A model generated the notes under the pieces. It searched no databases. It was not told the origin of the DNA and was given only the letters and a program-made list of their open reading frames with translations. Source: Rebecca billardiae RCC1528 (taxonomy: Eukaryota; Protista; Haptophyta). Taken from it: a stretch of 64,000 nucleotides of DNA. This document shows positions 12,896 to 31,261 of the stretch, piece by piece. The position numbers and the translations under genes are program-made. The DNA is taken from assembly GCA_965240325.2 (NCBI GenBank), contig OZ251224.1, forward strand, positions 3,782,001 to 3,846,000, in the 5' to 3' direction. How positions within the stretch are numbered: the stretch's first letter is position 1; each line of letters opens with the position of its first letter.

Positions 12896-12977
12896 TACTT
12901 GGTTGGTTAATTCCATCCTTCTTTTCGAGGACGACGATGGTTTATCATAGCGCGTCGCCACCCAGATCTCTCAACAG

Positions 12978-15900
12978 ATGCCGCTCGGGGTGGGCCTGCT
13001 CGCGCTCGTCGCGACGACGGCGCCACATCCGGGGCCGCTGCTGCGCGTGGGCAGCGCGGGTGGCGTCTCCCGCATATCGAGCGGCGTGCAGCACACCTGC
13101 GTCCTCTACGACACTGGCCTCGCGAAGTGGTGCGCCGCGTCGCCGCGCAAGCGCGGCGCTTCTGCGCGCCCCGCCCTCCCCAATCCGCATGTGCTCTCCG
13201 CTCACGCGCCGGCCGCGCGGGGATACCTGCGGCGACGAGCAGCTTTGGGAAGAACTCGAACGGACAGCTGGGCTACGACAACACCGACGACATCGGCGAC
13301 AACCCCAACGAGCTCGGCGACGGCCTCCCGTTCCTCACCATGCCCACCAGCACCACGATCACCGACCTCTCGACGGGCGCTTTGCACTCGTGCGCGGTGC
13401 TCTCGGACGAGACGATCCGATGGTGCGCGTCGTGCACCGGCGCTCCCGCGCGACGCCGGCGGGAATGCCCCCGCGCTCGACGACCCCCTCACACGCGCGC
13501 CGCGCCCGCGCGGGATTGGTTGGCATGCCGCCTGCCCGCCGACCGCCGCGTCCTCGCCGCAGCTGGGGGCTGAACGACAAGGGGCAGCTCGGAACGGGCG
13601 ATAGCACGTCCGCTGGAGACGGCGCAGGCCGCGCCATGGGCAACACGCTGCCGGCGGTCAACCTCGGCGGCTCAGCCACGCCGCACGCCGTGCGCTGCGG
13701 CTTTTGGCACACGTGTGCGCTCACCACGATCTCGTCTGTGCTCGGCGTGCAGTGCTGGGGCAAGGGCGACAAGGGCGAGCTGGGGTACGAGAATTCGAAC
13801 GACCGCTCGGCGCCCGGGGGCCACATTTCCTTCGGCACCGGCCTGACCGTCAGCTCGATCGACGCGCACCTGGGCGAGCACAACTGCGTGCTCTTTGCAG
13901 ACGGCTCGGTCAAGTGGTGCGCGCAGGGCGGCGCGCGCGCGCATGCGCGGCGCAGAGCGCGACACCGGGCCGAGTGCGTGGGTGTGCGGCGCATTGGGCC
14001 GCGCACGGCGCACGCCGCACGAACCGCCTCCGGCGTGTGCCCCGCGCGCCTGTTCCCGCGCGCAGCTGGGGCTACAACGGCAAGGGTCAGCTCGGCACGG
14101 GCGACTCGGACATCCGCGGCGCCTCGTCGAACTCTATGGGCGACGACCTGCCCGCGGCGCTCCCCGACGGCTCGGCGGACGAGGTGGCGGTCGGGCTCCA
14201 GCACTCGTGCGCACGCCTCACCGCCGGTGGCATCAAGTGCTGGGGCGACGGCGCGTCTGGGGCGCTGGGCACCGGCACCACTGACGAAGAGAACGACCCA
14301 TCGACTGTCTCAAGCTTCACGCTCGGCTCAGGGCTCACACCCACCGCGCTCAGCCTCGGCTCCATGCACGGCTGTGCGGTCGCAACGGGCGGCGTGCTCA
14401 AGTGGTGCGTGCGGCGCTCCGCGCCTCGCCGCCCCGCGCCACGCGCCCCCGGCCCGGTCCACCACGCCGTCACAGGCGACCCGCCCGCCATGCAGCTCAC
14501 CGCAGACCCCGCTTCGCGCCCCGCGCCTCTCGCGAACTCCGCTCGTTGCGGTGCGTGCTGTGCGCACGCGCGCCGCGCGCTCCCGCCCGTGCCGCGATGC
14601 GTGCGCGTGGCCGCGGGCTACGCCACGCGGCTTGGCGCAGCTGGGGCGCCGCAGACAAGGGCCAGATCGGCTCCGGCGACGCGTCCAGCCGTGGCGACTC
14701 CGGCGGCGAGATGGGCGACGTTCTCAGGCCCGTCGACCTCGGGACCGGCCTGGGCGCCGAGGCGCTGAGTGCTGGCTCCCTGTTCACGTGCGCCGCGACA
14801 GACGACGGCGGCATCAGATGGTGCGTGCGCACGCGCGCGCACGCGCGCGGAGTGATGGGTCGCGGGGCGGTGCGCGCGGCCGCGCAGCGCGCCGGCCGCT
14901 GTGGGCGTGGCTCTGGTGGCTCCCGCGCGGCATGGCGAGCGCGCGCACGCGCCGGGAGGTCGCGCGAGCGCTGCTCGGCCACCGCGCATGGCACCACGCA
15001 CACGCGTGCCACGTGGCTCTGCGAGCACGCGCCTGACCCGCGCGCGCGTGCAACCGGCCGCGCGGCGCGCGCGCGTGCTGCGCAGCTTCGGCGACCCTGA
15101 CAAGGGGCAGCTGGGCACGGGCGACGACGTGCAGCGCGGAGCGAGCGCTGGGACGATGGGGAACAACCTGCCTGCCATCGGGCTGATGCCGCCACCCTTT
15201 CCGCCGCCCGCGCCGCCCTCGCCGCCGCCGAGCCCTCCGCCACCGAGCCCGCCGCCCGCGCCGCCGCCGAGCCCTCCGCCACCGAGCCCGCCGCCCGCGC
15301 CGCCGCCGAGCCCTCCGCCACCGAGCCCGCCGCCCGCGCCGCCGCCGAGCCCTCCGCCACCGAGCCCGCCGCCCGCGCCGCCGCCGAGCCCTCCGCCACC
15401 GAGCCCGCCGCCCGCGCCGCCGCCTTCGCCACCACCGTCGCCACCACCCAGCCCACCGCCGTCGCCACCGTCACCGCCGCCGAGCCCGCCGCCATCACCT
15501 CCGCCAAGACCGCCTCCGAGCCCGCCGCCAGGCCCGCCGCCGTCGCCACCACCGTCACCACCAGCGAGCCCGCCGCCTCCTAACCAGCCGCCCTCTGAGC
15601 CGCCATCACTGCCGCCCTCGCCACCACCGTCTTCGCCACCATCGCCTCCGCCGAGCCCGCCACCGAGCCCGCCGCCGAGCCCGCCCTCGCCGCCGCCCTC
15701 ACCGCCGCCCTCGCCGCCGCCCTCGCCGCCGCCCTCGCCGCCGCCACCGCAGCCGCCACCACAGCTGCCGCCCAGCCCACCGCCACGGGCGCCGCCCTCG
15801 CCGCCGCCCAGCCCGCCGCCGAGCCCGCCACCGCCCAGATTACCGCCCTCGCCACCGCCCTCTCTGCCGCCCTCGCCACCTCCGAGCCCACCACCCTCGC

Positions 15901-18900
15901 CGCCGCCCGCGGCGCCGCCGTCCCCGCCGCCGAGCCCGCCGCCGTCGCAGCCACCGAGCCCACCACCACCCACGCCACCACCGTCACCACCGCCTCTGCC
16001 GCCACCATCGCCACCACCGAGCCCACCGCCTTCACCGCCGCCCTTGCAACCGCCGAGCCCGCCGCCGAGCCCGCCGCCGCCTTCGCCACCGCCCTCACCA
16101 CCGCCCTCACCACTGCCATCCCCGCCACCCAGCCCGCCGCCGCCCTTGCCGCCACCCTCACCTCCGCCCTCGCCGCCACCATCGCTCCCGCCCGGCCCGC
16201 CACCGAGCCCCCCGCCACCGAACCCGCCACCAGGCCCGCCGCCGCCCTTGCCTCCACCCTCGCCGCCCCCGTCGCCATCGCCTGCACCACCACCGAGCCC
16301 GCCGCCGAGCCCGCCACCATCGCCACCACCGTCACCACCACCGAGCCCTCCGCCTCCTAACCAGCCGCCCTCTCCGCCGCCATCACCGCCGCCCTCGCCA
16401 CCACCGTCTTCGCCACCATCGCCTCCGCCGAGCCCGCCACCGAGCCCGCCGCCGAGCCCGCCACCGCCCCTACCACCACCTTCACCGCCGCCCTCGCCTC
16501 CGCCCTCGCCGCCGCCGAGCCCACCTCCGAGCCCGCCGCCGCCCTCGCCGCCGCCTGTCCCGCCACCCTCGCCGCCGCCACCACCGCCGCCATCCCCGCC
16601 GCCACCGCCCTCGCCCTCGCCGCCGCCTTCGCCGGGCCCACCGCCGAGCCCGCCGCCGCCGCCACCACCATCCCCGTCGCCACCGCCGTCGCCCTCGCCG
16701 CCGCCTTCGCCGGGCCCACCGCCGAGCCCGCCGCCGCCACCACCACCATCCCCGCCGCCACCGCCGTCGCCCTCGCCGCCGCCTCTGCCCAGCCCACCGC
16801 CGAGCCCGCCGCCACCATTCGCGCCGCCACCGCCTTCGCCCTCGCCGCCGCCACCGAGCCCACCATTGAGTCCGCCCTCGCCGCCGCCCTCACCGCCGCC
16901 CTCGCCGCCGCCCTCGCCGCCGCCCTCGCAGCCGCCACCGCAGCCGCCACCACAGCCGCCGCCCAGCCCACCGCCACTGGCGCCGCCCTCGCCGCCGCCT
17001 AGCCCGCCGCCGAGCCCGCCACCGCCCAGATTACCGCCCTCGCCACCGCCCTCTCTGCCGCCCTCGCCACCTCCGAGCCCACCACCCTCGCCGCCGCCCG
17101 CGGCGCCGCCGTCCCCGCCGCCGAGCCCGCCGCCGAGCCCGCCGCCGAGCCCGCCGCCGTCCCCGCCGCCGAGTCCGCCACCGAGCCCGCCGCCGAGCCC
17201 GCCGCCGTCGCCACCGCCGGCGCCGCCGCCACCGAGCCCGCCGCCGAGCCCGCCGCCCAGCCCGCCGCCATCGCCACCGCCCGCGCCGCCACCACCGAGC
17301 CCGCCGCCCAGCCCGCCGCCCAGCCCGCCGCCATCGCCTCCGCCGCTGCCGCCGCCACCGAGCCCGCCGCCGAGCCCGCCGCCATCGCCACCGCCCGCGC
17401 CGCCGCCACCGAGCCCGCCGCCCAGCCCGCCGCCATCGCCACCGCCGGCACCGCCGCCACCGAGCCTGCCGCCCAGCCCGCCGCCGTCGCCACCGCCGTC
17501 GCCACCGCCGACTCCGCCGCCACCGAGCCCGCCGCCCAGCCCGCCGCCATCACCACCGCCGACTCCACCGCCACCAAGCCCGCCGCCCAGCCCGCCGCCA
17601 TCGCCTCCGCCGCTTCCGCCGCCACCGAGCCCGCCGCCGAGCCCGCCGCCATCGCCACCGCCGGCGGCGCCGCCGCCGAGCCCGCCACCCAGCCCGCCAC
17701 CATCATCACCGCCGTCGTTGCCTCCACCGAGCCCGCCGCCGAGCCCACCTCCGTCGCCACCGCCGAGCCCGCCACCAAGCCCACCGCCATCACCATCGCC
17801 GTCGCCGCCGCCACCGAGCCCACCGCCGAGCCCGCCTCCGTCGCCACCGCCGACTCCGCCGCCACCGAGCCCGCCGCCCAGCCCACCGCCATCACCACCG
17901 CCGCTGCCGCCGCCGCCGAGCCCGCCGCCCAGCCCGCCGCCGTCGCCACCGCCGTCGCCACCGCCGACTCGGCCGCCGCCGAGCCCGCCGCCCAGCCCGC
18001 CGCCATCGCCACCGCCAGTGCCGCCGCCCCCGAGCCCGCCGCCGAGCCCGCCTCCATCGCCACCGCCGGCGCCGCCGCCTCCGAGCCCGCCGCCCAGCCA
18101 GCCGCCCAGCCCGCCGCCATCGCCACCGCCGGCGCCGCCGCCACCGAGCCCACCGCCGAGCCCGCCGCCATCGCCGCTGCCTGCGCCGCCGCCGCCGAGC
18201 CCGCCACCCAGCCCGCCACCATTATCACCGCCGTCGTCGCCTCCACCGAGCCCGCCGCCGATCCCACCTCCGTCGCCACCGCCGGCGCCGCCACCGCCGA
18301 GCCCACCACCAAGCCCACCGCCATTACCACCGCCGTCGCCGCCGCCACCGAGCCTGCCGCCCAGCCCGCCGCCGTCGCCACCGCCGACTCCGCCGCCACC
18401 GAGCCCGCCGCCCAGCCCGCCGCCATCACCACCGCCGCTGCCGCCGCCACCGAGCCCGTCACCGAGCCCGCCGCCATCATCGCCGCCGTCGTCGCCGCCC
18501 CCGATCCCACCGCCGAGCCCGCCGCCATCGCCACCGCCGGCGCCACCGCCACCGAGCCCACCGCCGAGCCCGCCGCCATCGCCACCGCCGCCGTCGCCTC
18601 CACCGAACCCGCCGTCCAGCCCGCCGCCATCACCACCGCCGCTGCCATCGCCACCAAGCCCGCCACCGAGCCCGCCGCCACCACCGTTTCCGCCGCCGCC
18701 GCCCTCGCCCTCACCGCCGCCGCCCTCGCCCTCGCCGCCGCCGCCCTCACCATCGCCGCCGCCGCCACCACCATCGCCCTCGCCGCCGCCGCCCTCGCCC
18801 TCGCCGCCGCCACCTAGCACACCACCAACACCGCCACCTCCGAGCCCACCACCCTTGCCACCGCTCGCACCGCCACCGCATCCACCACCAAGCCCTCCAC

Positions 18901-21900
18901 CGCCCATGCCTCCACCCTCCCCGCCCCCGTCGCCACCGCCGTCATCACCACCGAGCCCGCCGCCGTCGCCACCGCCGGCACCACCGCCACCGAGCCCGCC
19001 GCCAAGCCCGCCGCCATCACCACCGCCGCTGCCGCCGCCACCGAGCCCGCCGCCCAGCCCGCCGCCGTCGCCACCGCCGGCGCCGCCGCCACCGAGTCCG
19101 CCGCCAAGCCCGCCGCCATCGCCACCGCCGCTGCCGCCGCCACCGATCCCGCCGCCGAGCCCGCCGCCATCGCCACCGCCCGCGCCGCCGCCACCGAGCC
19201 TGCCGCCCATCCCGCCACCATCACCACCGCCGACTCCACCGCCACCGCGCCCGCCGCCGAGCCCGCCGCCATCGCCACCGCCGCTGCCGCCGCCACCAAG
19301 CCCGCCGCCCAGCCCGCCGCCGTCGCCACCGCCGGCGCCGCCGCCACCGAGCCCGCCGCCAAGCCCGCCGCCATCGCCACCGCCGCTGCCGCCGCCACCG
19401 AGCCTGCCGCCCATCCCACCACCATCACCACCGCCGACTCCACCGCCACCGCGCCCGCCGCCGAGCCCGCCGCCATCGCCACCGCCGCTGCCGCCGCCAC
19501 CGATCCCGCCGCCGAGCCCGCCGCCATCGCCACCGCCCGCGCCGCCGCCACCGAGCCCGCCGCCAAGCCCGCCGCCATCGCCTCCGCCGCTGCAGCCGCC
19601 ACCGAGCCCGCCACCGAGCCCGCCGCCATCACCTCCGCCGGCGCCGCCGCCACCGCCGAGCCCACCGCCGAGCCCGCCGCCATCGCCTCCGCCGGCGCCG
19701 CCGCCACCGCCGAGCCCACCGCCGAGCCCGCCACTATCACCACCGCCGACTCCACCGCCACCGCGCCCGCCACCGAGCCCGCCGCCATCGCCACCGCCGC
19801 TGCCGCCGCCACCGAGCCCGCCGCCGAGCCCGCCGCCATCGCCACCGCCCGCGCCGCCGCCACCGAGCCCGCCGCCGAGCCCGCCGCCATCGCCTCCGCC
19901 GCTTCCGCCGCCACCGAGCCCGCCACCGAGCCCGCCGCCATCACCTCCGCCGGCGCCGCCGCCACCGCCGAGCCCACCGCCGAGCCCGCCGCCATCGCCT
20001 CCGCCGGCGCCGCCGCCACCGCCGAGCCCACCGCCGAGCCCGCCACTATCACCACCGCCGACTCCACCGCCACCGCGCCCGCCACCGAGCCCGCCGCCAT
20101 CGCCACCGCCGCTGCCGCCGCCACCGAGCCCGCCGCCGAGCCCGCCGTCATCGCCACCGCCGGCGCCGCCGCCACCGAGCCTGCCGCCGAGCCCGCCGCC
20201 ATCGCCTCCGCCGGCGCCGCCGCCACCGCCGAGCCCACCGCCGAGCCCGCCGCCATCGCCACCGCCCGCGCCGCCGCCACCGATCCCGCCGCCGAGCCCG
20301 CCGCCATTGCCACCGCCTGCGCCGCCGCCACCGAGCCTGCCGCCCAGCCCGCCACCATCACCACCGCCGACTTCACCGCCACCGCGCCCGCCACCGAGCC
20401 CGCCGCCATCGCCACCGCCGCTGCCGCCGCCACCGAGCCCGTCGCCGAGCCCGCCGCCATCGCCGCCGCCCGCGCCGCCGCCGCCGAGCCCGCCGCCCAG
20501 CCCGCCACCATCACCACCGCCGGCGTCACCGCCACCGCGCCCGCCACCGAGCCCGCCGCCATCGCCACCGCCCGCGCCGCCGCCACCGAGCCTGCCGCCG
20601 AGCCCTCCGCCATCGCCTCCGCCGCTGCCGCCGCCACCGAGCCCGCCGCCGAGCCCGCCGCCATCGCCACCGCCCGCGCCGCCGCCACCGATCCCGCCGC
20701 CGAGCCCGCCGCCATTGCCACCGCCTGCGCCGCCGCCACCGAGCCCGCCGCCGAGCCCGCCGCCATCGCCTCCGCCGCTGCCGCCGCCACCGAGCCCGCT
20801 GCCGAGCACGCCGCCATTGCCACCGCCCGCGCCGCCGCCGCCGAGCCCGCCGCCCATCTCGCCACCATCACCACCGCCGGCGTCACCGCCACCGCGCCCG
20901 CCACCGAGCCCGCCGCCATCGCCACCGCCCGCGCCGCCGCCACCGAGCCTGCCGCCGAGCCCTCCGCCATCGCCTCCGCCGCTGCCGCCGCCACCGAGCC
21001 CGCCGCCGAGCCCGCCGCCATCGCCACCGCCCGCGCCGCCGCCACCGAGCCTGCCGCCGAGCCCTCCGCCATCGCCTCCGCCGCTGCAGCCGCCACCGAG
21101 CCCGCCGCCGAGCCCGCCGCCATCGCCACCGCCCGCGCCGCCGCCACCGATCCCGCCGCCGAGCCCGCCGCCATTGCCACCGCCTGCGCCGCCGCCACCG
21201 AGCCTGCCGCCCAGCCCGCCACCATCACCACCGCCGACTCCACCGCCACCAAGCCCGCCACCGAGCCCGCCGCCATCGCCACCGCCGCTGCCGCCGCCAC
21301 CGAGCCCGCCGCCGAGCCCGCCGCCATCGCCACCGCCTGCGCCGCCGCCACCAAGCCCGCCGCCGAGCCCGCCTCCGTCGCCTCCGCCGCTGCAGCCGCC
21401 ACCGAGCCCGCCGCCCAGCCCGCCGCCATCGTCACCGCCCTCCCGGCCGCCATCGTCACCGCCCAGCCCGGCTCCAAGCCTTCCGCTTCTCACGCCACCG
21501 CCCGCACTGCCACCGTCGCCACCGCCGTCGCCACCGCCGCGCCCACCGCTGGGCCCCACGCCACCGGCACCACCGCCCTCTCCGCCGCCCTTGCCGCAGC
21601 CGCCGTCGACGTTGTCGCCGCCGCCGAGCGCGCCCCCGCCGCCCCCGCCGCCGCCCCGGCCACCGCCACGCCCGCCCCCCGCGCCGCCGCCCGCGCCGCC
21701 GCCGTCGCCGCCGCCACGCCGGCCGCCGAGCCCGCCACCCGCGCCGCCCTCGGCGCCGCCGCCCCCGCCGCCGCTCGCCGCGCCGGCCCTGCTCTCCGCC
21801 GCCTTCGACGCGGGCGCCACCAGCCTCGTGCTCCGCTTCGACGCGCCGACCGACCGCGGCGGGCTGAACGCCGGGCTGGCGCGGTGCGCGCCGCTGCTCG

Positions 21901-24900
21901 ACGACGAGACGCTCGGCCTCGTGGCCGGCGGCGCGGCGGAGGTCGAGGCGGCGGACGGCGGCGCCGACGAGCGCCAGTGCTACTGGCGCGATGACGCGTC
22001 CCTCGTGATCAACCTGCGCGCCTCTTCGCGCGTCCGGCCGGGCGACCGCGTGGGCGTGCGCGCGCGCGCGGTCGCACACACGGCGTGCGCGGCGCGCGCG
22101 GCCGGCGCGCCGTGCGCCGAGCCCGCGTTCGTCAGCGTGTCGAGCGTGGTGATCTCGGCAGACGCCCCGTGCGGCGTGGGCACGGCGTGCGCGGCGCCCA
22201 TCGCCACCGTCTCCGGCGCGCACGCCGTGCCGAGCTGCGCGCACGCAACCCTCCGCCTCGTCGGCGGCGCAGCGGGCGCGGGCTTCGTCCTTCCGAATGG
22301 ATTCTCGTGGCGGGTGTCGTCGCCCGAGCAGGCACCCGCGCCCGCGGAGACGGTGGCGGCGCTGTCGGCGGTGCTCGAGGCGCTGCCGCCGACGCAGCCC
22401 GTGCTCGAGCTCGACGCCTCCGCGCTCGGCGCCGAGGGCGGCTTCGTCTTCTCCCTCGTCCTCACCTCCGCGCTCGGCATCGCGTCCGCGCCCGCCGCGC
22501 ACGCCGTGGCGCGCGCGCCGCCGGACGGCCCGAGCGTCGAGCTGAGTGTGCCGTCGTCGGGCGCGGTGGTGCGCGCGGACGCGGCGGTGCGGCTTGGCGC
22601 GCGCGCGGACGTGTCGCCGTGCTGGCCGCCCGCGCTCTCCGCGCAGGTGCGCTTCGGCTGGGCGCTGCTCAACGTGACTCGCGACGGCGGCGGCGGCGGC
22701 GGCGGCAGCAGTGGCGGCGGCGCGGCGTTGCCTGCCGCAGCGGCGCCGCGCGTGCCCGACCTGGGCGACGCCGCGGGCTCGACGCTGCGGCTGCCGCCGT
22801 GGTCGCTGAGCGCGGGCCACGTGTACACGCTGCGCGTGCTCGCGACGATGGCCGCGGCGCCCGAGCTCAGCGCGAGCGCCGACGTCTCGCTGCGCGTGCC
22901 CTACCTGCCGCTGCGCGCCGCGCTCACGCCGAGCGCCGCGCGCGTGGGCGGCGCCGACGCGGTGCGGCTGGACGCCTCCGCCTCGGCCAACCCGAACGAG
23001 GCGGCGGGCGGCGGGCTCGCGTTTGCGTGGGCTGTGGCGCGCGCGTCCGACGGCGCGCCCGTCGAGCTCGACCTCGCCAACGCCACCTCGCCCACGCTGC
23101 TGCTGCCGCCGGGCGCGCTGCCGCACGGCGCGGCGTATCTCGTGCGCGTGCTCGTGTCCGCGCCCGGCGCGCCCGCGCTCGCGCCCGCGGCGGCGGAGGC
23201 GAGGGTGGAGGTGGCGGCGGCCCTGGCGCCGCTGCCGGCGCTGCGCCTCACGCCACTCGCCGCACGCAAGGCCGCGCCCACGTGGGAGCGCAGCAGCGGG
23301 CGCCTCGTCCTCCGCGCCACCGTCGACGCCGCCGCGGACGCCGAGCTCGCCGACGGCGCGGACGCGGAGGCGGCGCACGACTTTGCGTGGCGCGCGTGGC
23401 TCGTGGGCGCGGGCGGCGCGCGCGCGCCCGCGCCGCTCGAGCTTGCGGACGCGTCGGGCGTCACGACGACGGGCGCCGCGCAGCCCGCGCTCGCCTTCCG
23501 CAGCGGCGCGCTCAGCGCGGGCGCGACCTACGCGTTCGAGGTGCGCGCGACGCGGCGCGCGGCCGGCGGCGCGGCCGGCGGCGCGGCCGGCGGCGCGGCG
23601 GTCGCGGAGCTGGTCGTGGTGGTGAACCGGCCGCCGCACGGCGGCGGGCTGGCGGTCTCGCCGGAGCGCGGGGTCGCGGCGCTCACCGCGTTCGCGCTGC
23701 ACGCGCCCAGCTGGACGGACGACGACGCGGACGACCTGCCGCTCTCCTACGCGTTTGGGCACTCGCCGGAGCGCGGCGGCGGCGCGGCTGCGGACGAGGG
23801 CGCGGGCGCGGCGCTCGGCGCGGCGCAGCGCTCGGCGCACGCGCTCGCGCTGCTGCCCGTGGGGAACCGCACGCTGCACGTGCGCGTGGCCGACGTGCTC
23901 GGCGCGAGCGCGCACGCCACGAGCCGCGTGCGCGTGAACTCGCTCCGCGCCCACGCCGCCGCGGCCGCCGCGGCCGGCTCGGCCGATGCCGACGCAGACG
24001 ACGCGATGCGAATGGCCGTCGGCCGCGCGGGCCTGGCGCTCGAGACGGGCGACGGGACGCGCTCTCTGCAGCTGGCGAGCGCGATCGCCGCCGAGCTGGG
24101 CGGGCCCGCCGCCAACGCGAGCGCCGCCCTCGACTCCGAGGCCGCCGTCGCAATCTCGCTCCTCGAGATCAGCGCGGCCGCGGCGCGCGCGGGCGCGCTG
24201 CAGGAGGCGGCGTCGCGCGCGCACGCCGCGTTCACCTTGTCGGCGGTGGTGAGCGCCGCGCCGGCGGCGGCGCTCGCGGGTGGCGGGGTGCAGCTGAGCG
24301 CGCTGGCGCAGGCCGCGGCGATCGGCGCCGCCGCGGCACAGGGCGGCCTCGGCGCCGCCGAGGCCGCCGCCATCGTGCGCACACTGGACTCTGCTCTCCT
24401 CGCGCCGACCGACTCCCACGAGCGCGCGGAGACGGCCGCGCTCGGCGCGGCCGCGGCGTCCGCCGCGCACAACCTGGCGCGCGCGCTGCTCGCGGGCGCG
24501 GTGCCGGGCGAGCCCGCCGTGACGGCGGTCGGCGCCGCCCTCAACATCTCCGCCGTGCGCCGCGCCCCCGCCGCGCTCCTCAACGGCAGCTTTGGCGGCG
24601 CGGGCGGCGCGGGCGCACTCCGAGTGCCGCCGAGCGCGCTCGCCGCCGTCGGCACGGACGAGCTTGGCGGCGCGGGCGTGGACGTGGTGCTGTGGAGCGT
24701 GGGCCGCGCGGCGCTGCGCGCGGCGCCGGCGCACGCCAACGCCACCGCGCCGCCGCCGGCGCACGGCGCGGCGCGCACGTCCACCAGCGTCTTCTCGGTC
24801 ACGCTCGCGTCAGCGGCGAGCGGCGCCGCGCTGCGCGTCTCGGGCCTGGCTGAGCCGCTGCTGCTCGGACTGCCGCCGCTGCCGGCGGGCGCGGCGGCGC

Positions 24901-27900
24901 AGCCGGGCGCGCCGAACGCGACGGGCGCGGGCGCGGAGGGCGGGGCGCACGCCGCGCCGCCGCCCACCGAGTGCCGCTGGTGGGACGAGGCGCGCGGCGC
25001 GTGGGTGGCTGACGGCTGCGCCACGCTCGCCAACGCGCCCGGCGGCGGCGGTGACGGCGGCGGCGGCGGCGGTGACGGCGGCGGCGGCGGCGGTGACGGC
25101 GGCGGCGGCGGCGGTGACGGCGGCGGCGGCGGCGGTGACGGCCTACTGTGGTGCGCGTGCGACCACCTCACCGAGTTCGCGGGCGTGGCGCTCGACGTGC
25201 CCGAGTCGGGCGCGGACGCGCTCGACGACGTGCGCTCGTTCACCCTCAACCCGCTCTCGACGAGCGACGTGGCGGGCGCGCTCAGCGCACCCGCCGCAGA
25301 GCGCGACCCGACCCTGCACTCGTTGGTCGCTGCGCTCGCGGCCGCGTGCGCCGTCTCGGTGGTGGCGCTGGCGTGCTTCGAGCGGCAGAGGGCGCGGCGG
25401 CTCGCGGCGCAGGTGGGCGGGGACGACGACAAGCCGGGCGCGGAGCCGACGGCGCGCCCCTTCCGCCGCGCGCTCAGCATGCACGCCGCGCGCGCGCGCG
25501 CCTCTGACCCGGCGGCCGCCGCCTCGCGCGCCGCCGCGCCGGGCGCTGGGCTCGTCAGCGCCGAGATTGCGATCTCGGCACAGTCCGGCGCCGAGATCGA
25601 GATCTCGGCGGCGCTGCGCGCGGCGCTGACCGAGCTGCACGCCGCGTGCGAGATCCAGCGGTACGTGCGCGGGCTGCTCGCGCGCCGCGCCGCGCTCGAC
25701 GACGCCGAGTCGAACGCGCCGAGCACGCCGCCGGCGGGCGCCAAGCGCGAGCGGCTCGCGCGCTGGCGCGCGGCCACGCGCCGCGCGAGCTCGAGCGGAG
25801 GCGAGGAGGCGCTGGGGCTGGCGCGGGCCCTCGCCGTGCGCGCGGGCTCGGAGCACACGCTGCTCGGCGCGCTGCTCGCACGGCGCGAGCCCGCCCTCCG
25901 CCCCTCCGAGCTCGCCATCCTCTTCTGGGCGGCGGCTGCGCTCGGCCTCGTGCTCTCGTGCGCGCAGTACGACAACGCCCAGCCCGAGCAGGGGGCGGCC
26001 ATTGTTCTGATACACGAGCTGCTCGCCGCGGCGACGACCGCGCTGCTCACCGCGCCGCTGCTCGGCGTGGTGAAGGCGCTCTTCTCGCGCCGCCGCCGGC
26101 CGAGCGTGCGCCGCATGCTCTCCCGCGCCGAGCGCGCCAAGCTCGTCTTTGCCGAGGCGGTGAGTGTGCGCGCCGCCGCGCTCGAGCCGCGATCGGCGGC
26201 AGAGGCGGCGGCGCCGCCGCCGCCGCCGCCGACGGCAGGGCCGGGCGCGGGCGCGGGCGCGGGCGCGGCGGGCGGTGGGCGCGGCGCGCGCGCGAGGGCG
26301 TGGGCGGCGCGCGTGCTCGGCGGCGCCTCGCGCGCGCGCGGCGCGGGCCGCACGGCGCTGCCCGACGGTCGCGTGCTCCCCACGCGCCAGCCGCGCCGCT
26401 CGCCCGTCCAAGTGACGCTCAGCGCAGCCAGCGATACGCCGCCGGGCGCGGCGCCGCGCGGCGCGGGCTCGGCAGGGCTGGCCGCCGCGCCCGCTCGGTG
26501 CGCCGACGAGGGCGCAGGCAGCGGCTCGAGCGGCTCCGACTCGGGCGGGCGCGACAGCTCGCTTGGCGCCCGCGCCCGCGCGCTGCAGCACACGCAAGGC
26601 GTGCGCTCGCGCGTCGCCGCAGCGGAGGGTGGGCTGGGCGCGGGCGGCGCGCTGGGCGGGGGCGGCGCGCCCGGCGCGGACGGCGGCGCCGCCGAGGCCG
26701 AGGAGCGGGCGCGGGCGCCGCAGTCGGGCGCGGCGCCGCCTTCTTCGGCGCAGCCCCCGAGCCTGCTCACTGAGTGCGCGCTGCGCGAACACACGGCGCG
26801 GACCTCCTCCACGACGCGACGGCGCAGCAGCGCACGCGCCGCCCTGGGCGGGCCGGCCACCTCGGCCGCGGCCGAGCGGAGTCCTGTCGGCGCGCGCGCT
26901 GAGCCCGCCTCCCTGCGCCAGCCCGCGTCACTCGAGCTCGCGGATGGCGCGCCGCCCACGCCGCCATCGCGGCTGCCGAGGCTCCGGGGCGGCGCCGACG
27001 GGCCCTCCCTCGGCGGCCGACCGACCCGGCTGCCGCTCCGCTCCTCAGGCTCCTCGCCGCCCCCGCGCTCCTCGCCGCCCCCGCGCTCGCCTCCGGGCTC
27101 GCCGTCGCGCGACGCGCGCGCGCCGCGCGCCGAGGCGGCGCGGGAGTACGCGGAGGCGGCGGCGGCGGCGGCGGCCAACACGGCCAGCAGCAGGACCACG
27201 GCACCGCGCTTCTCGAGTCGCTCGGGATCGACCGTGACCCTCGCGTGGGCCTCGCCCCAGCGCTCGACCTCCTGTGGACGCGTCTCGCCAGCGAGCGCGT
27301 TGGCGGCGGCGGCGGCGGCGGCGGAGGCGGCGGCGGGTGGCTCGAGCTCGCGAGACGGCCGTGCGTCGGGCGCGGCGCCCGGCAACGGCGGCGCCGCCGG
27401 CTCCGCCCCGTGTTCAGGCGCCTCGCCGCGCTCGCCGCCCTACTCGCCGCCCGGGCCCGCGCCTCCGCCATCGGCGGCGGCCGCCGACTCCGTCGTACCG
27501 ATGCGCCGAGCGCCGCCGCGCGAGCGGCCGGCGTCAGCGGCCGGCCGCGTGCAGCTGCCGCCGATGCCGCGGCCGGCGGCAGTGGCGCACGGCGGCGGCA
27601 GCGGCGAGTGGCACCGCGCCCGGCCGAGCGAGCGGCTGCAGCTGCAGCTCAGCTCGCCGCCGCTCCGCACGCGCGTGGGCGAGCTCCAGGCGCGCCTCGC
27701 CACTTTCTCCAACCCCTCCGCGCCGGACTCGCCCGCGCCGCGCCGGGAGCCGGCGCGCCGCACGTTCTCCGCAGAGCTCGCGCAGCAGTACATGCCGTCC
27801 GCGGCGTCGCGCTTCGAGGCTCCGACCGAGGCCGAGCGGCTGCGCGCTTCAGGTAGGTGGTCTGCCGCGCCCTCGCCGCAGCTGCCGCCCCGCCTCGGCG

Positions 27901-28778
27901 GCGTGCTGGAGCGCCAGTCGTCTGCAGCGCTCGCGACCGACGACGGCGCGCGCGCCACCGACCTCTCGGGCGTCTCCGTGGCGGAGGCGTCCGAGCTGAC
28001 CAGCGCGTCCCTCGCATCGCTGTCGGCGCTCTCCGCTCCGCACGCGAGCGGGCTCGACTCCGCCTCCGCCTCGCTGCTGCGCTACCGCTTCGTGCTCGCC
28101 GACCCGACGCTCTCGGGCGCGGTGCACCCGCCCGCCGCGCGCCGCTTCCTCGAGGAGCTCGGCTTTGGGCGCGCTCGCGCGGCGCGCGCGGTTGCGCAGC
28201 TCGAGGCGGCCGCCGCCGCGTCGGACGAGGCCGCGGGCGGAGGCGGCGGGCGCGCGGGCGGAGGCGGCGGGCGCGCGGGCGGAGGCGGCGGGCGCGAGCG
28301 CGCAAACGGTGACGGCGTCATCACCTTCCGCGCGCTGTGCAGCTGGTACGCGGTGCGAGTCGAGGACGAGGCGCGCGCGCGCGTGCGCCGCGCGGCGCGC
28401 GCGCGCGCGCTCGCGCCGCTGTGCTGCGCCGCGCGCGGCGCGTGCTCGGCGGCGTGCGGCCGGCGCGTGCGCACGACCCTCGGCTGGCTCATCTCGGTGG
28501 CGACGGTGTGCGCGTGCTGCCTCTCCGCGCTCGCGTACGGCTACCGCTTCGGCCGCGCCAAGACGCGGCGCATGCTGCTCAGCTGGGGGCTCGCCGAGGC
28601 GCAGCGGCTCGCGCTCGTCGAGCCGCTGCTCACGCTCGTGCGCGTCGGCGCGGCGCAGGCGGTGCGGCGCACGGCGCACTTTGGCGCGACAGTGGGCGAC
28701 TCGATCAACCACACGCTCGCGTCACTCGCCGGCCGCTGCCTGCAGTGGGCGCTGGGCGGCGCCGGGCTGGCCGGCTGA
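12978..28778 (+). CDS. Giant (~4965 aa) polycystin-1/adhesion-receptor-like protein: signal peptide, RCC1 repeats, (SPPP)n stalk, REJ, GAIN/GPS, multiple TM
   Basis: Exons 12978-13129, 13243-13422, 13563-13916, 14066-14404, 14641-14820, 15086-28778 (14898 nt, open after splicing). RCC1-type repeats G..HTC.....KCWG.N..GQLG. Pro-rich region ~15190-21775. REJ-like VNRPPHGG...SWTDDDADDLPLSYAFG. GPS CRWWDE...W...GC...CACDHLTEFA. Hydrophobic segments follow. Confidence 0.85.
15190..21775 (+). repeat. Coding minisatellite encoding ~2200 aa of Ser-Pro3/4 (extensin-like) repeats
   Basis: A 39-bp unit (SPPPPSPPPAPPP) occurs five times from 15230. A ~51-bp unit (SPPPSPPPSPPPxPPPP) dominates ~17200-21400. 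Longer blocks are duplicated (e.g. the PRLPP block at ~15835 and ~17025). Confidence 0.95.
25041..25142 (+). repeat. 18-bp tandem repeat (GGGGGD)n inside the GPS motif
   Basis: ggcggcggcggcggtgac repeated about 5-6 times between the GC and CAC cysteines of the GPS. Confidence 0.9.
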
Positions 28779-29425
28779 GCGCAGATTACTGTCTAGCTCG
28801 CTATTACCATCAACATACAGTCACCTGCTGTACTAGCAGCTAGTAATCATGCGCATGCGCGAAGCATCCGACGAGTGTCCGGAGCCGAGCCTAGTTCCCC
28901 GGGCTACTGATGACTGAACTCAGTCGTACCGTTGTGTTAGTGCCGACGAATCGGCCTCTGGCCCTCTGCAGGCTGAAGCTAACTAGTGACTGCCGAGTCG
29001 TAGCTACTGCGTCAGTGCGAGACGCGAGTGCCCGAACTCCGCGACGACCGATCGTAACTTACGACTGTACGAACAGCGGCAATGTCGGTACTGAGCTGGG
29101 CATCCGCAGCCAGTCTGACGACGACGACTGGCTCCCGACTCGCGGGGCCGCTACCTGCTACAGCGGAGCCTACGGGCACTCGGCCCAACCTTCAAGCTGT
29201 TGACGCTTCGCCGTCACCGGCCGACCGTGTTCCCCGCCGTGACCGTCACTACCGTACTGGGTATCACGTGGATCCCGGAGCACGACCCAGGCCTCGACAA
29301 GCGGCAAGCAGTGGTCATGCGTGGAGGCGACCCCATCGTTCCGGGCCCGGGCGGCCGCGCGCAGGCACCGCGGTGCCGCACGCACTGATTATCGGCCTGC
29401 TCAGTCCGAAATCGCGCAGTCCACG

Positions 29426-31261
29426 ATGATGCCTGCGGTGCTGGGCGTGGTTGTGGCCATCGGCGGCGTCGTCACGCCGGGGCCGCGAGCAACGGCTCCG
29501 GGAGTCTCACACGCGCGCATCACGCGTGCCGCATCCCGTGTCGCACTGTCGATGAGCGCCTTTGAGGTCGAGCGACGAGCGTTTGTCGGTGGCATTGCGT
29601 CGTCCGCCGCGCTCGCCGACTCGTTCGAGACTCGCTTCCTGCGGCAGGTCTCGCCGACGCCCGGGCTGGCGACGGCGCCGAACATGCCCGATCTGCCGTC
29701 TTTTTACGCGCCCTTCTTCAAGGGCGGCGGGCGCCGCCTCACCCCGGAGGCGCTTGCCCTGCGCAACCTGCCGACTACGTGTCCGCCGATCCTCGAGCTG
29801 CGGAAGCTGGTGCTGCAGCTTGACGCGCTGCGCATGCTCGAGGGCTCGGAGCAGCTCAAGCTCGCGCGCGACGCCACGTTCTGGCCGGCCATCGAGCGCA
29901 TCCTCGGCGAGCTCTCCGTCGCCCTCGCCGAGAGCCCGCCGCTGCTCGTCCTCTTCGTGCCAGACGACCAGACGCGCGAGACCAAATCGCGCACGGCCGC
30001 GATGCGCGAGGAGCTGAACAGCGTGCAGACGGCGGTGTACGGGCGGAACGTGACGGGGCTCGCGCAGCTGCTCCTGCCGCTGGCTCTCCAGCTCGAGCAG
30101 CTCGGCCGCCTCACCGTCGGCCGCTTCCCGTACACGGTGCCGCGCGGTGGGCGCTTTGAGACGCTCCCGCGGCTGCTGGGCAGAGGTGCGCCGCCGCAAG
30201 CGCGCGCGCGCGATCCGTCTGCGCGGCGCGCGGACTCGGCGGGCGGGCGGTGGTTGGCGCGATGCGCCCACCGGCCGGCCCCGTCCACCCGACCGACCCG
30301 CACGCGCGGCACTCTGCACGCGCACGCACGCTGCGCCGCGCGCGCAGCCGAGGCCACGCTCACGTTCCGACGGATCACCTCGCTTACGGAGAACAGCTCG
30401 TCGACGGTGCGCGCGACGCTGTTGCTCGACGGGTACGCCGCGCCGATCTCGGCCGGCGCGTTCGCCGACCTCTCCGTCCGCGGCTTCTACAACGGGCTGC
30501 CGCTGTATGACGGCCTCGGGCTGCAGCAGAACAAGTCGGCGGTGGGCAAGAACGCGCTCGGCTGCGGCACCGTCTCCGCAAACGTGACGGGCTTCGTCAA
30601 CCCGTACACGGGCGAGTACCGCACGGTGCCGCTGGAGTACAAGGCGGTGCGGGCGTCAGAGCCCGTCTACTTTGAGCTCGAGGAGCTCGAAGTCGACGAG
30701 GAGGAGGAGCCAGGCGAGGTGCAGCAGCCGGGCGGCGACGGGGGTGGCAGCGGCAGCGGCAGCGGCAGCGGCAGCGATTCTGGCCGGCGCGGCATGCTCT
30801 CGGCGTTCGGGCTCGGCAGCAGGAAAGTGGAGGAGGAGGCGAACAAGTCGCCGACCGAGAAAGCGCCCGGCCCGCCCGCCATCCCCTTCAATGTGGACGG
30901 CGTGATCGGGCTCTTCCATCCGCCGGGGAATCCGGATGGCGCGTCGTCGCAGTTCTTTTGGCTCGCAGACCCGCAGGCCGACGGCCGGAAGCTCGACGGC
31001 AAGTACGCGCCGTTCGCGCTGTGCGTCGACGGGTACGAAGACCTGCTTTCGCTGCGCGCGGGCGACATGCTCGAGCTCGTCGAGCTCGACCGCAGGGCGA
31101 CACGGATCCTGACGCGACCGGGGCCCGCGCCCAAGTACTCAACGCGCTCGCGCTCAACGTCCATCCGCGACTACAACATGCTCACTGGCGAGTACATCCG
31201 CGAGCAGGACGCCACCGCGATCCCTGCGGAGGTGCCGCTAGAGAAAGCCCCGCCGCGATGA
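29426..31261 (+). CDS. Plastid-type cyclophilin PPIase, CYP38/TLP40-like
   Basis: Signal-peptide-like start MMPAVLGVVVAIGG, then a helical region, then LPRLLGRAEATL after removing the 162-bp intron 30186-30347. Cyclophilin motifs LDGYAAPISAGAFADLSVRGFYNGL, VPLE, ASSQFFW and LDGKYAPF match the CYP38/CYP37 type. Confidence 0.85.
   Translation: MMPAVLGVVVAIGGVVTPGPRATAPGVSHARITRAASRVALSMSAFEVERRAFVGGIASSAALADSFETRFLRQVSPTPGLATAPNMPDLPSFYAPFFKGGGRRLTPEALALRNLPTTCPPILELRKLVLQLDALRMLEGSEQLKLARDATFWPAIERILGELSVALAESPPLLVLFVPDDQTRETKSRTAAMREELNSVQTAVYGRNVTGLAQLLLPLALQLEQLGRLTVGRFPYTVPRGGRFETLPRLLGRGAPPQARARDPSARRADSAGGRWLARCAHRPAPSTRPTRTRGTLHAHARCAARAAEATLTFRRITSLTENSSSTVRATLLLDGYAAPISAGAFADLSVRGFYNGLPLYDGLGLQQNKSAVGKNALGCGTVSANVTGFVNPYTGEYRTVPLEYKAVRASEPVYFELEELEVDEEEEPGEVQQPGGDGGGSGSGSGSGSDSGRRGMLSAFGLGSRKVEEEANKSPTEKAPGPPAIPFNVDGVIGLFHPPGNPDGASSQFFWLADPQADGRKLDGKYAPFALCVDGYEDLLSLRAGDMLELVELDRRATRILTRPGPAPKYSTRSRSTSIRDYNMLTGEYIREQDATAIPAEVPLEKAPPR

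What the first reader, a model, noticed from the sequence alone, without database searches (positions are those of the whole stretch)
12978..28778. Giant algal polycystin-1/adhesion-type receptor: RCC1 propeller on a ~2200-aa extensin-like stalk above REJ-GAIN/GPS
Seen: signal peptide, ~7 RCC1-like repeats, Ser-Pro stalk, REJ-like region, GPS with intact HL|T, and TM1. Then a PKD1-like TM2-3 (EHTLLGALL...), a long disordered loop and PKD1-like TM4-5 (GWLIS...LLSWGL...LVEPL). No PLAT or TRP-like channel domain is recognisable. Known: GAIN/GPS autoproteolysis at HL|T and REJ domains define polycystin-1-like and adhesion receptors; SPn repeats form hydroxyproline-glycosylated rods. Inference: a self-cleaving, possibly mechanosensory or adhesion receptor projecting several hundred nm from the cell. 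The ORF track misses the N-terminal module entirely.
Basis: partly seen in the sequence, partly recalled or inferred. Interest (0 to 1): 0.75.

Follow-up and report, generated by a model that had tools for sequence, protein, structure and literature searches.

The report
Giant stalked RCC1-REJ-GAIN algal surface receptor
A very GC-rich pavlovophyte-type alga encodes a 4,965-residue surface protein with a propeller head on a proline rod of up to about 0.7 micrometre, anchored by a polycystin-1-like self-cleaving module with no ion channel; it belongs to a family of over 100 genes in this genome that swap heads between bases.

Summary
Window 12978-28778 (+) is one six-exon gene (14,898 nt, 4,965 aa).

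- **Introns:** five phase-2 GT..AG introns each split the Cys codon of the RCC1 "C-W/F-G" motif. The propeller's last blade starts inside the giant exon.
- **Domains, N to C:**
  - signal-like peptide
  - 7-blade RCC1 propeller
  - 2,196-aa Ser-Pro3 rod (73% Pro, no Tyr)
  - Cys-rich region
  - REJ (Pfam E 4e-28)
  - GAIN fold (Z 18.8 to BAI3) with intact CxCxHL|T
  - TM1
  - IQ motif
  - TM2-3
  - about 650 aa of disordered loop
  - degenerate EF-hand pair
  - TM4 and a TM5-like segment
- **Absent:** PLAT and the channel domain.
- **Family:** the genome has at least 103 REJ matches. RCC1 repeats sit upstream of a REJ base at 22 or more loci.
- **Relatives:** the best public ones are unstudied Diacronema lutheri and Pavlovales sp. 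proteins. I found no paper describing the family.
- **Earlier notes:** the scan has already met this family on other pieces of this genome.
- **New here:** this gene is a mosaic. Its head is 84-91% identical to heads that sit on distant bases. Its base is 63-88% identical to LRR- and FG-GAP-headed genes, so the breakpoint lies in the rod.

Function (a mechanically or ligand-triggered, self-cleaving receptor) is inferred, not shown.

The parts
12978..13129 (+). Exon 1: start codon, signal-like hydrophobic N-terminus, and the closing strands of the propeller. Ends ..AAG TG|GT.
   Evidence: First ATG after an in-frame stop. Weak RCC1_2 hit, E 0.009. Similarity to the paralogs starts at 12976, and exon 1 is 93-95% identical to three paralogs. 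The signal peptide was judged by eye only.
13243..13422 (+). Exon 2: one RCC1 repeat.
   Evidence: PF00415, E 2e-5. The junction rebuilds a TGC codon.
13563..13916 (+). Exon 3: two RCC1 repeats.
   Evidence: RLD E 7e-10, RCC1_2 E 3e-7.
14066..14404 (+). Exon 4: two RCC1 repeats.
   Evidence: RLD E 2e-12. HERC1 E 4.5e-18 and UVR8 E 1e-15 in the PDB.
14641..14820 (+). Exon 5: one RCC1 repeat.
   Evidence: Weak RCC1-family hits, E 0.004-0.1. Exon-like conservation without indels.
15086..15185 (+). Start of the giant exon 6: first half of the seventh RCC1 blade, running straight into the rod.
   Evidence: The FGDPDKGQLG repeat start is in the frame of the 4,564-codon ORF. It is 81-91% identical to the paralog heads.
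15186..21773 (+). Ser-Pro3 rod: 2,196 aa, 73% Pro, 18% Ser, no Tyr/Cys/Lys. Up to about 0.68 micrometre if fully polyproline-II.
   Evidence: The length follows from 0.31 nm per residue (established value; inference).
21774..22778 (+). Cys-rich region before REJ with no Pfam match. Conserved with the base subfamily.
   Evidence: No Pfam hit at E up to 1. 70-72% identical to the five closest bases.
22779..23960 (+). REJ domain.
   Evidence: PF02010, E 4.1e-28, 98.6 bits. 86-88% identical to the closest bases.
23985..25181 (+). GAIN domain: helical subdomain A (about 23985-24488) and beta subdomain B (about 24519-25181). The GPS motif is at 24972-25178. The predicted cleavage is between Leu 25167-25169 and Thr 25170-25172. 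A copy-specific (GGGGGGD)x5 loop lies within it.
   Evidence: AF2 model pLDDT 73. Foldseek's top 11 hits are GAIN domains. VIA Z 18.8 to BAI3 over 280 aligned residues. GPS profile hit E 2e-7. Motif invariant in 21 of 21 members.
25308..25385 (+). TM1.
   Evidence: Hydropathy peak 2.61. Conserved in paralogs and in D. lutheri.
25650..25691 (+). IQ-type calmodulin-binding motif (IQxxxRGxxxR).
   Evidence: Q, R, G and R are invariant in 19 paralogs. Pfam IQ is weak, 15.6 bits. The family profile hits the IQ regions of RSP23 (E 5.5e-5) and myosin-5A (E 0.0036).
25902..26084 (+). TM2 (25902-25970) and TM3 (25992-26084), preceded by the conserved 'EHTLLG' box.
   Evidence: Hydropathy. Invariant H, L, G, EL, FW. 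Aligns with D. lutheri KAG8459354.1.
26085..28052 (+). Disordered loop of about 650 aa, rich in Ala/Ser/Arg/Pro/Gly and variable between paralogs.
   Evidence: pLDDT about 30. No column conservation. Composition.
28053..28367 (+). EF-hand pair with the fold retained and the Ca2+-ligand positions degenerate. Contains a copy-specific (GGGGGRA)x3 insertion.
   Evidence: VIA Z 7.3, rmsd 1.9 A over 75 residues to centrin. Pfam EF-hand matches 13 of 19 paralogs but not this copy. Loop alignment.
28467..28664 (+). TM4 (28467-28544) and the conserved 'FG..TR..LSW..AE.Q.L..EP' box with a TM5-like helix (about 28575-28664).
   Evidence: Hydropathy 2.06 for TM4; the fifth segment is below threshold in this copy. 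Invariant residues. 54 matches in the genome. D. lutheri match E 8e-11.
28665..28778 (+). Short conserved C-terminal tail and the TGA stop.
   Evidence: All 18 paralogs read to their ends stop within a few residues of the same position.

Best explanation
**What it is (shown).** The locus is one gene for a type-I-oriented giant surface receptor. Its parts, N to C, are:
- a seven-blade RCC1-type propeller
- a 2,196-residue Ser-Pro3 rod
- a Cys-rich region
- REJ and GAIN ectodomains with an intact HL|T site
- a 4-5-helix membrane anchor whose cytoplasmic parts carry an IQ motif, a long disordered loop and a degenerate EF-hand pair

It has no PLAT domain and no channel domain.

**How it probably works (inferred).**
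- The propeller is the ligand- or contact-binding head.
- The rod is probably hydroxylated and glycosylated, and holds the head up to about 0.7 micrometre from the membrane.
- The GAIN domain probably cleaves itself at HL|T and keeps the two halves non-covalently joined, as in polycystin-1 and adhesion GPCRs.
- Pulling or binding at the head would strain or shed the N-terminal fragment and expose the 'TEFAGVALDVP' stalk peptide to the membrane core.
- The output would go through calmodulin on the IQ motif. One of the separately encoded PKD2-type channels may also be involved.

**Family (shown).** The gene is one member of a Pavlovales family of over 100 genes. The same base carries interchangeable heads, and this copy arose by a head/base exchange inside the rod.
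For: **Single gene**
- Five GT..AG introns, all phase 2, each rebuild TGC. The CDS is 14,898 nt.
- Exons are 84-91% identical to three paralogous heads and have only 3-nt indels. Introns are 79-82% identical with many frame-breaking indels. All splice sites are kept.
- RCC1 repeats lie 2-22 kb upstream, on the same strand, of a REJ or anchor match at 22 or more loci.

**Domains**
- Pfam RCC1 and REJ.
- GAIN fold at Z 14-19.
- GPS profile E 2e-7. HLT is invariant in 21 of 21 members.
- IQ and EF-hand.
- The topology is self-consistent, with IQ, loop and EF-hand all on the cytoplasmic side (inference).

**Family and relatives**
- The base is collinear with D. lutheri KAG8459354.1 (32% identity, E 7e-88) and KAG8462819.1.
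- An MMETSP transcript of a Pavlovales sp. relative exists.
- At least 12 strong PKD_channel matches (E<=1e-10; 30 over the cut-off) lie elsewhere in the genome.
- 54 matches to the P4H-type oxygenase domain.

**Mosaic:**
Against: - There is no RNA or protein evidence for this gene.
- Cleavage, hydroxylation, glycosylation, surface location and ligand are all untested.
- This copy has a 32-residue Gly/Asp insertion in the GPS loop, so Pfam GPS is below its cut-off. The model is low-confidence there.
- Both EF loops have lost the position-12 acid.
- The fifth TM is weak, so the topology of the extreme C-terminus is uncertain.
- The membrane-core model is poor (pLDDT 49) and shows no match to polycystin-1. 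A tethered-agonist mechanism therefore has no structural support.
- Hidden in-frame introns within the giant exon cannot be excluded.
Confidence: 0.6

Rival explanations
1. It is mainly a structural or adhesive surface fibril, not a signalling receptor. It would work like the Chlamydomonas sexual agglutinins, which have a globular head on a hydroxyproline-rich shaft. The head would mediate gamete, cell-cell, prey or substrate adhesion, and the REJ-GAIN-TM base would act chiefly as a membrane anchor and a shear-release point.
For: - The rod makes up 44% of the protein.
- The heads are varied binding modules: RCC1, LRR, FG-GAP and TIG.
- The family is large and its heads are shuffled, as expected for recognition molecules.
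- REJ proteins are linked to gamete recognition in sea urchin and are candidate male-gamete genes in Ectocarpus (PMC4700764).
- The Ca2+-binding loops are degenerate in this copy.
Against: The cytoplasmic IQ motif, EF-hand fold and TM boxes are conserved across paralogs and in D. lutheri. A passive anchor would not need them. The rod has no Tyr for cross-linking.
Confidence: 0.25
2. It is a recently formed recombinant copy that is decaying or not expressed, that is, a young pseudogene or neutral chimera.
For: - Mosaic origin.
- Copy-specific Gly-rich microsatellite insertions in the GPS loop and in the EF-hand linker.
- Degenerate EF loops.
- No expression data.
Against: - The 14.9-kb reading frame is intact, with all ten splice signals present.
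- Exons are more conserved than introns and carry only in-frame indels.
- The EF degeneration is shared with five other intact genes, so it is a subfamily trait and not decay of this copy.
Confidence: 0.08
3. The RCC1 exons belong to a separate small secreted-propeller gene, and the giant ORF starts on its own.
For: No transcript evidence. An ORF finder shows the pieces separately.
Against: - The seventh blade begins inside the giant exon, right after a GCAG| acceptor, and no ATG follows that acceptor in frame before the rod.
- Six blades alone would not close a propeller.
- The same head-rod junction is kept in three paralogs.
- RCC1 and REJ co-occur at 22 or more loci. In some genes (C1:32k, C29:1031k) and in a metagenomic protein, RCC1 and REJ lie in one uninterrupted ORF.
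Confidence: 0.03

Closest known systems
Polycystin-1 family (PKD1, PKD1L1-3, PKDREJ; sea urchin suREJ3)
   Same: A large ectodomain ending in REJ plus GAIN/GPS with HL|T just before TM1. After the cleavage site comes a 'T-x-F-x-G...VP' stalk peptide; its likeness to PC1's stalk is recalled from memory and was not tested. PKD2-type channels that could act as partners are encoded in the same genome.
   Different: No PLAT domain after TM1. No C-terminal six-TM channel-like half, so 4-5 TMs instead of 11. No PKD, LRR-WSC or C-lectin ectodomain set. It has an IQ motif and an EF-hand pair inside the TM region. The TM segments show no detectable similarity to PC1.
Sea urchin suREJ1/suREJ2 (REJ-GPS proteins with one or two TMs and no channel)
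   Same: REJ plus GPS on a short membrane anchor without a channel, and a variable binding module at the N-terminus. They serve as precedent for REJ proteins as recognition receptors (from PMC4700764 and my own knowledge).
   Different: Animal sperm proteins with EGF and C-lectin heads. They have no polyproline rod, no IQ/EF module, and a different TM number.
Adhesion GPCRs (latrophilin, BAI, GPR126, CELSR)
   Same: The best structural matches for the GAIN domain, covering both subdomains (Z 14-19). Same modular logic: an adhesive head, a GAIN autoproteolytic hinge and a membrane core.
   Different: The membrane core is not a family-B 7TM. No HormR domain. G-protein coupling has no basis here.
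Chlamydomonas/Volvox hydroxyproline-rich glycoproteins and sexual agglutinins; plant extensins
   Same: Long Ser-Pro(n) polyproline-II shaft carrying a globular head. P4H-type oxygenase domains are present in the genome.
   Different: - The motif is SP3, with few SP4.
- There is no Tyr, so no isodityrosine cross-links.
- The shaft is an internal spacer of a multi-pass membrane receptor, not a wall or fibril protein.
- Hydroxylation was not tested.
Diacronema lutheri KAG8459354.1 / KAG8462819.1 and Pavlovales sp. CCMP2436 KAJ1635852.1 (annotated hypothetical, 'EF-hand domain-containing' or 'REJ domain-containing')
   Same: True family members. They share a collinear REJ-GAIN-GPS-TM1-IQ-TM2-3 ... 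EF-hand-TM4-5 base (32-35% identity).
   Different: The annotated models have TIG/IPT modules and no RCC1. Their EF-hands are canonical. They are shorter as annotated. No publication on them was found.
RCC1-like domain proteins (HERC1/2, UVR8, RPGR, RCC1)
   Same: The repeat sequence matches at E 1e-15 to 5e-18, with seven repeats.
   Different: The known eukaryotic RLDs named here are intracellular. This one follows a signal-like peptide and sits at the tip of an extracellular rod.

Membership tests
Polycystin-1 (PKD1/PKDREJ) family | REJ domain in the ectodomain | tested here: met
   PF02010, E 4.1e-28, 98.6 bits.
Polycystin-1 (PKD1/PKDREJ) family | GAIN domain with a GPS (HL|T) immediately before TM1 | tested here: met
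   Fold Z 18.8, Foldseek E 6e-7, GPS profile E 2e-7, motif invariant in 21 of 21. Cleavage itself was not tested.
Polycystin-1 (PKD1/PKDREJ) family | PLAT domain in the first cytoplasmic loop | tested here: not met
   No PF01477 hit at E up to 1. There are only two PLAT matches in the whole genome, and neither is at a REJ locus. An IQ motif occupies that loop.
Polycystin-1 (PKD1/PKDREJ) family | Eleven TMs with a C-terminal PKD_channel-like six-TM half | tested here: not met
   Four clear and one weak hydrophobic segment. No PF08016 hit. The protein and 18 paralogs end shortly after TM5.
Polycystin-1 (PKD1/PKDREJ) family | TM2-5 homologous to the polycystin-1 N-terminal TM domain | tested here: inconclusive
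   Family profiles of TM2-3 and TM4-5 do not recover PC1 or PKD1L3 chains from the PDB at E up to 10. The fold model is too weak (pLDDT 49) and matched only EF-hands.
Adhesion GPCR (class B2) | GAIN domain | tested here: met
Adhesion GPCR (class B2) | Secretin-like seven-TM domain | tested here: not met
   No 7tm_2 Pfam hit. Only 4-5 hydrophobic segments, split by a 650-aa loop.
RCC1-like domain (seven-blade propeller) | Seven tandem RCC1 repeats | tested here: met
   Pfam matches on each exon, above cut-off on E2-E4 and weak on E1, E5 and E6. PDB matches to HERC1 and UVR8. The count is six repeats plus one split repeat. The propeller fold was not predicted, because the spliced sequence was not joined.
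Extensin / hydroxyproline-rich glycoprotein | Ser-Pro(3-5) repeats | tested here: met
   315 SPPP motifs in 2,196 aa.
Extensin / hydroxyproline-rich glycoprotein | Tyr cross-link motifs (YXY/VYK) | tested here: not met
   Zero Tyr in the rod.
Extensin / hydroxyproline-rich glycoprotein | Prolyl hydroxylation and O-arabinosylation/galactosylation | not testable with these tools
   The only indication is that 54 matches to the P4H-type domain PF13640 exist in the genome.
EF-hand Ca2+-binding pair | Helix-loop-helix pair fold | tested here: met
   Z 7.3, rmsd 1.9 A over 75 residues to centrin. The region has pLDDT 85-95.
EF-hand Ca2+-binding pair | Canonical 12-residue Ca2+ loop (acid at position 12, D/N/S at positions 1, 3, 5) | tested here: not met
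   Both loops have Ala at position 12, and loop 2 lacks the position-1 Asp. There is no Pfam EF-hand hit in this copy or its five closest relatives, against 13 of 13 more distant paralogs.
IQ calmodulin-binding motif | [ILV]QxxxRGxxxR consensus | tested here: met
   IQRYVRGLLAR. Q, R, G and R are invariant in 19 paralogs. Pfam is weak at 15.6 bits against a cut-off of 20.3. Profile hits to IQ regions. Binding was not tested.

The most novel reading that the evidence does not exclude
The Ser-Pro3 rods are more than spacers. Their near-identical CCG-rich repeat DNA may act as the recombination substrate that lets a family of over 100 genes swap binding heads (RCC1, LRR, FG-GAP, TIG, lectin) onto self-cleaving REJ-GAIN signalling bases. 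That would give a unicellular alga a combinatorial repertoire of long-reach surface receptors, a germline-encoded and shuffling recognition system built on a polycystin-1-type mechanosensor.
Probability: 0.35. Interest if true: 0.8.

Novelty: new variant of a known kind. Interest (0 to 1): 0.6.

Why it matters
GAIN/GPS autoproteolysis and REJ domains are studied almost only in animal polycystins and adhesion GPCRs. Here the same hinge is found in a haptophyte, and three things differ:

- It has no PLAT and no channel.
- It is joined to a different calmodulin/EF-hand membrane core.
- It sits on a polyproline rod hundreds of nanometres long.

The gene belongs to a family of more than 100 genes with interchangeable heads. 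Three things would follow if it is expressed and cleaved:

- It would offer a simple non-animal system for asking what the REJ-GAIN unit does by itself.
- It would show how a wall-less alga senses or holds things well beyond its scale layer.
- It would show how repeat-mediated exchange builds receptor diversity.

It also shows that standard annotation truncates or splits these genes.

Tried and rejected
- **Word-indexed protein search.** I searched the REJ-GAIN region within the full-length ORF and got no hit at all. Low-complexity Ala/Gly words probably swamped the candidates. I treat this as uninformative, not as absence. The index-free profile search then found 8,715 relatives.
- **Own-genome search with the GPS-to-TM3 piece.** It failed twice on the server. 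I replaced it by fetching 20 paralogs.
- **Is TM2-5 polycystin-1-like?** Profile searches against the PDB gave only IQ-bearing proteins and designed helical repeats. The AF2 model of the whole tail was too poor in the membrane part, and its wide fold search returned only EF-hands. The ESM Atlas gave only low-score haptophyte and chlorophyte hypotheticals.
- **Literature.** Searches for REJ, GAIN or polycystin in haptophytes found no description of this family. 'Polycystin' mostly matched Polycystinea, and 'RCC1' matched strain names. The D. lutheri genome paper does not mention REJ.
- **Antisense giant ORFs.** I considered them (for example 14618-21820, minus strand, 2,400 aa) and rejected them. 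They are a by-product of the stop-poor CCG repeat.
- Exons were searched one by one by reference, so the propeller fold was not predicted.

Full report
**Setting.** The window is contig C5:3782001-3846000 of a 72-Mb, 41-contig genome. GC is 60-84% along the window. The best public relatives of the protein studied here come from Diacronema lutheri and Pavlovales sp. CCMP2436. D. lutheri is reported at 73% GC and 43.5 Mb (PMC8379373). The organism is therefore most likely a pavlovophyte haptophyte other than that strain. This is an inference, since no marker gene was checked.

**Gene model.** The first ATG after an in-frame stop is at 12978. The exons are:

| Exon | Coordinates |
|---|---|
| 1 | 12978-13129 |
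| 2 | 13243-13422 |
| 3 | 13563-13916 |
| 4 | 14066-14404 |
| 5 | 14641-14820 |
| 6 | 15086-28778 |

- All five introns are GT..AG with the pattern TG|GTGCGY ... GCAG|C. All are phase 2, and each junction rebuilds a TGC Cys codon inside the RCC1 'C-[WF]-G' motif.
- The lengths sum to 14,898 nt, which is 4,965 codons plus TGA.
- Independent support comes from three paralogous heads (C23 at about 8.2 kb, C32 at about 902.9 kb, C5 at about 2,815 kb). They align from 12976 onward.
  - Exons are 84-91% identical and have only two indels, both 3 nt.
  - Introns are 79-82% identical with dozens of frame-breaking indels.
  - All donors and acceptors are kept.
- The last RCC1 repeat starts in exon 6 and runs directly into the rod. 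The strands that would complete that blade are in exon 1. The head therefore cannot be a separate gene without leaving an open six-blade propeller (an inference from RCC1 structures).
Each exon was searched by reference.

**Head.** Pfam RCC1-family models matched every exon piece, above cut-off on E2-E4 and only weakly on E1, E5 and the start of E6. Exon 4 matches the HERC1 and UVR8 propellers at E 4.5e-18 and about 1e-15. Six whole repeats plus the split one make seven. The N-terminus (M-P-L-G-V-G-L-L-A-L-V-A-T-T-A) looks like a signal peptide. This was judged by eye only.

**Rod.**
- Position: nt 15186-21773, encoding 2,196 aa.
- Composition: 1,595 Pro, 394 Ser, and no Tyr, Cys, Lys, Trp or Asp, with 315 SPPP motifs.
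- Repeat structure: a 51-nt (17-aa) higher-order repeat of 84 copies at 80% match.
- Reach: at 0.31 nm per residue, a fully extended polyproline-II helix would be about 0.68 micrometre.
- Chemistry: hydroxylation and glycosylation are inferred only. The genome has 54 matches to the P4H-type 2OG-oxygenase domain.

**Ectodomain base.**
- A 335-aa Cys-rich stretch has no Pfam match.
- It is followed by REJ (PF02010, E 4.1e-28).
- For the next 485 aa I aligned 21 family members (A1) and predicted the structure (pLDDT 73). It shows a helical subdomain followed by a beta sandwich.
- Foldseek's top eleven hits are all GAIN domains, with the best at E 6e-7. VIA-align gives Z 18.8 to BAI3 (280 aligned residues, rmsd 4.6 A) and Z 14-18 to six further GAIN structures, covering both subdomains.
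- The family profile finds adhesion-GPCR GPS motifs with all four Cys, both Trp and HLT aligned (E 2e-7).
- CxCxHLT[DE]F is present in all 21 members.
- In this copy alone, a (GGGGGGD)x5 insertion sits between the second and third Cys. That explains the sub-threshold Pfam GPS score (19.2 bits).

**Membrane and cytoplasmic part.**
- Hydropathy gives TM1, TM2, TM3 and TM4 clearly. A fifth segment is hydrophobic in the paralogs but weaker here.
- Conserved features in the 19-member alignments:
  - an IQ motif after TM1 (IQxxxRGxxxR, with Q, R, G, R invariant);
  - an 'EHT/SLLG' box before TM2;
  - TM2-3;
  - a variable, disordered loop of about 650 aa;
  - an EF-hand pair;
  - TM4;
  - the box FG..TR..LSW..AE.Q.L..EP;
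  - a common C-terminus.
- The profile of the IQ region hits IQ-bearing chains: RSP23 at E 5.5e-5 and the myosin-5A IQ at E 0.0036.
- Pfam EF-hand models match 13 of 19 members but not this copy or its five closest relatives. Both loops have lost the position-12 acid. The fold is still predicted with confidence and matches centrin at Z 7.3 and rmsd 1.9 A.
- With the N-terminus outside, the IQ motif, the loop and the EF pair all fall on the cytoplasmic side. This is coherent, but it is inferred.
- There is no PLAT and no PKD_channel.
Profiles do not recover PC1 or PKD1L3 chains, and the fold model of the core is too weak to decide.

**Family.**
- The genome has at least 103 REJ matches, in open frames of up to 21,132 aa.
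- It has 54 matches to the C-terminal anchor.
- RCC1 repeats lie 2-22 kb upstream on the same strand of a REJ or anchor match at 22 or more of about 34 RCC1 loci. About 2% would be expected by chance from the REJ density.
- The index-free search of 1.84 billion representatives with the REJ-to-TM3 profile found 8,715 proteins at E<=1e-3 and 745 at E<=1e-30.
- The top named hits are D. lutheri KAG8459354.1 and KAG8462819.1 and Pavlovales sp. KAJ1635852.1. One Pavlovales relative is also present as an MMETSP transcript.
- Those proteins carry TIG, REJ, GPS and EF-hand domains. They align collinearly with this gene through TM3 and again at the C-terminal box.
- Only the top hits, which include all the named Pavlovales proteins, reach the TM2-3 part of the profile. 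The anchor therefore looks lineage-restricted.
- One metagenomic protein (P0078, 2,529 aa) has three RCC1 propellers plus REJ plus GPS in one ORF. RCC1+REJ is therefore not unique to this genome.
- I found no paper describing the family.
- Earlier notes of this scan describe the same family on other pieces of this genome. I retested the architecture independently here.

**New point: a mosaic.**

| Compared with | Head | Base (pre-REJ region to C-terminus) |
|---|---|---|
| C23, C32 and C5:2815k genes | 84-91% nt identical (exons) | C23/C32: only 28-47% aa identical per segment; C5:2815k base not found |
| Five genes on C7 and C10 | not RCC1 | 63-88% aa identical |

- Three of those five genes carry their heads in the same continuous ORF as the base. 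Two heads are LRR and one is FG-GAP.
- None of the five has RCC1 within 7.5 kb upstream.
- The exchange point must therefore lie within the rod, whose CCG-rich repeats are an obvious substrate. The mechanism is inferred.

**Mechanism and status.**
- *Shown:* gene structure, domain identities, GAIN fold, intact cleavage motif, family size, mosaic origin.
- *Inferred:* secretion; Hyp-glycosylated rigid rod; autoproteolysis; force- or ligand-triggered exposure of the post-cleavage peptide; calmodulin output; possible pairing with one of the separately encoded PKD2-type channels (at least 12 strong matches).
- *Main rival:* an agglutinin-like adhesive fibril in which the base is mostly an anchor.

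**Verdict.** This is a real feature. It is a new variant of the polycystin-1/REJ-GAIN receptor kind and not a member of the PKD1 family proper, because PLAT and the channel half were tested and are absent.

Noticed in passing
window 12976-15185 compared with G000:C23:~8.2k, C32:~902.9k, C5:~2815k; and window 21774-28775 compared with L013-L017: Head/base mosaic. The RCC1 head is near-identical to heads on distant bases. The base is near-identical to LRR- and FG-GAP-headed genes. This implies exchange within the Ser-Pro3 rod.
   Followed up: partly
window ~25040-25140 and ~28240-28310: Copy-specific Gly-rich in-frame microsatellite insertions: (GGGGGGD)x5 in the GPS loop and (GGGGGRA)x3 in the EF-hand linker. 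Both are absent from all 18-20 paralogs aligned.
   Followed up: partly
window 14618-21820 (minus strand) and other long ORFs over the rod: A 2,400-aa antisense ORF and several other-frame ORFs span the CCG repeat. They are composition artefacts of stop-poor repeat DNA, not genes.
   Followed up: no
window 29321-31261 (+): The next ORF downstream (646 aa) looks by eye like a cyclophilin-type PPIase with an N-terminal extension, possibly with an intron. It was not searched.
   Followed up: no
G000:C16:881490-881921 (-): A PKD_channel match lies inside a 6,448-aa open frame. This may be a polycystin-like gene that does keep a channel half, in the same genome.
   Followed up: no
P0078 (JGI/IMG metagenome protein, 2,529 aa): Three RCC1 propellers, REJ and GPS in one uninterrupted ORF, annotated only as 'alpha-tubulin suppressor-like RCC1 family protein'. 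Its source organism is unknown.
   Followed up: partly
G000, whole genome: 54 matches to the P4H-type 2OG-Fe(II) oxygenase domain PF13640. This is an unusually large set, which would fit heavy proline hydroxylation of the many Ser-Pro3 rods.
   Followed up: no
L037:6173-7501 (+), equal to G000:C7:17672-19000: An integrin-alpha-like FG-GAP propeller head (PF01839, E 1.4e-19) starts the 4,799-aa ORF of a sister gene that has the same base subfamily.
   Followed up: partly
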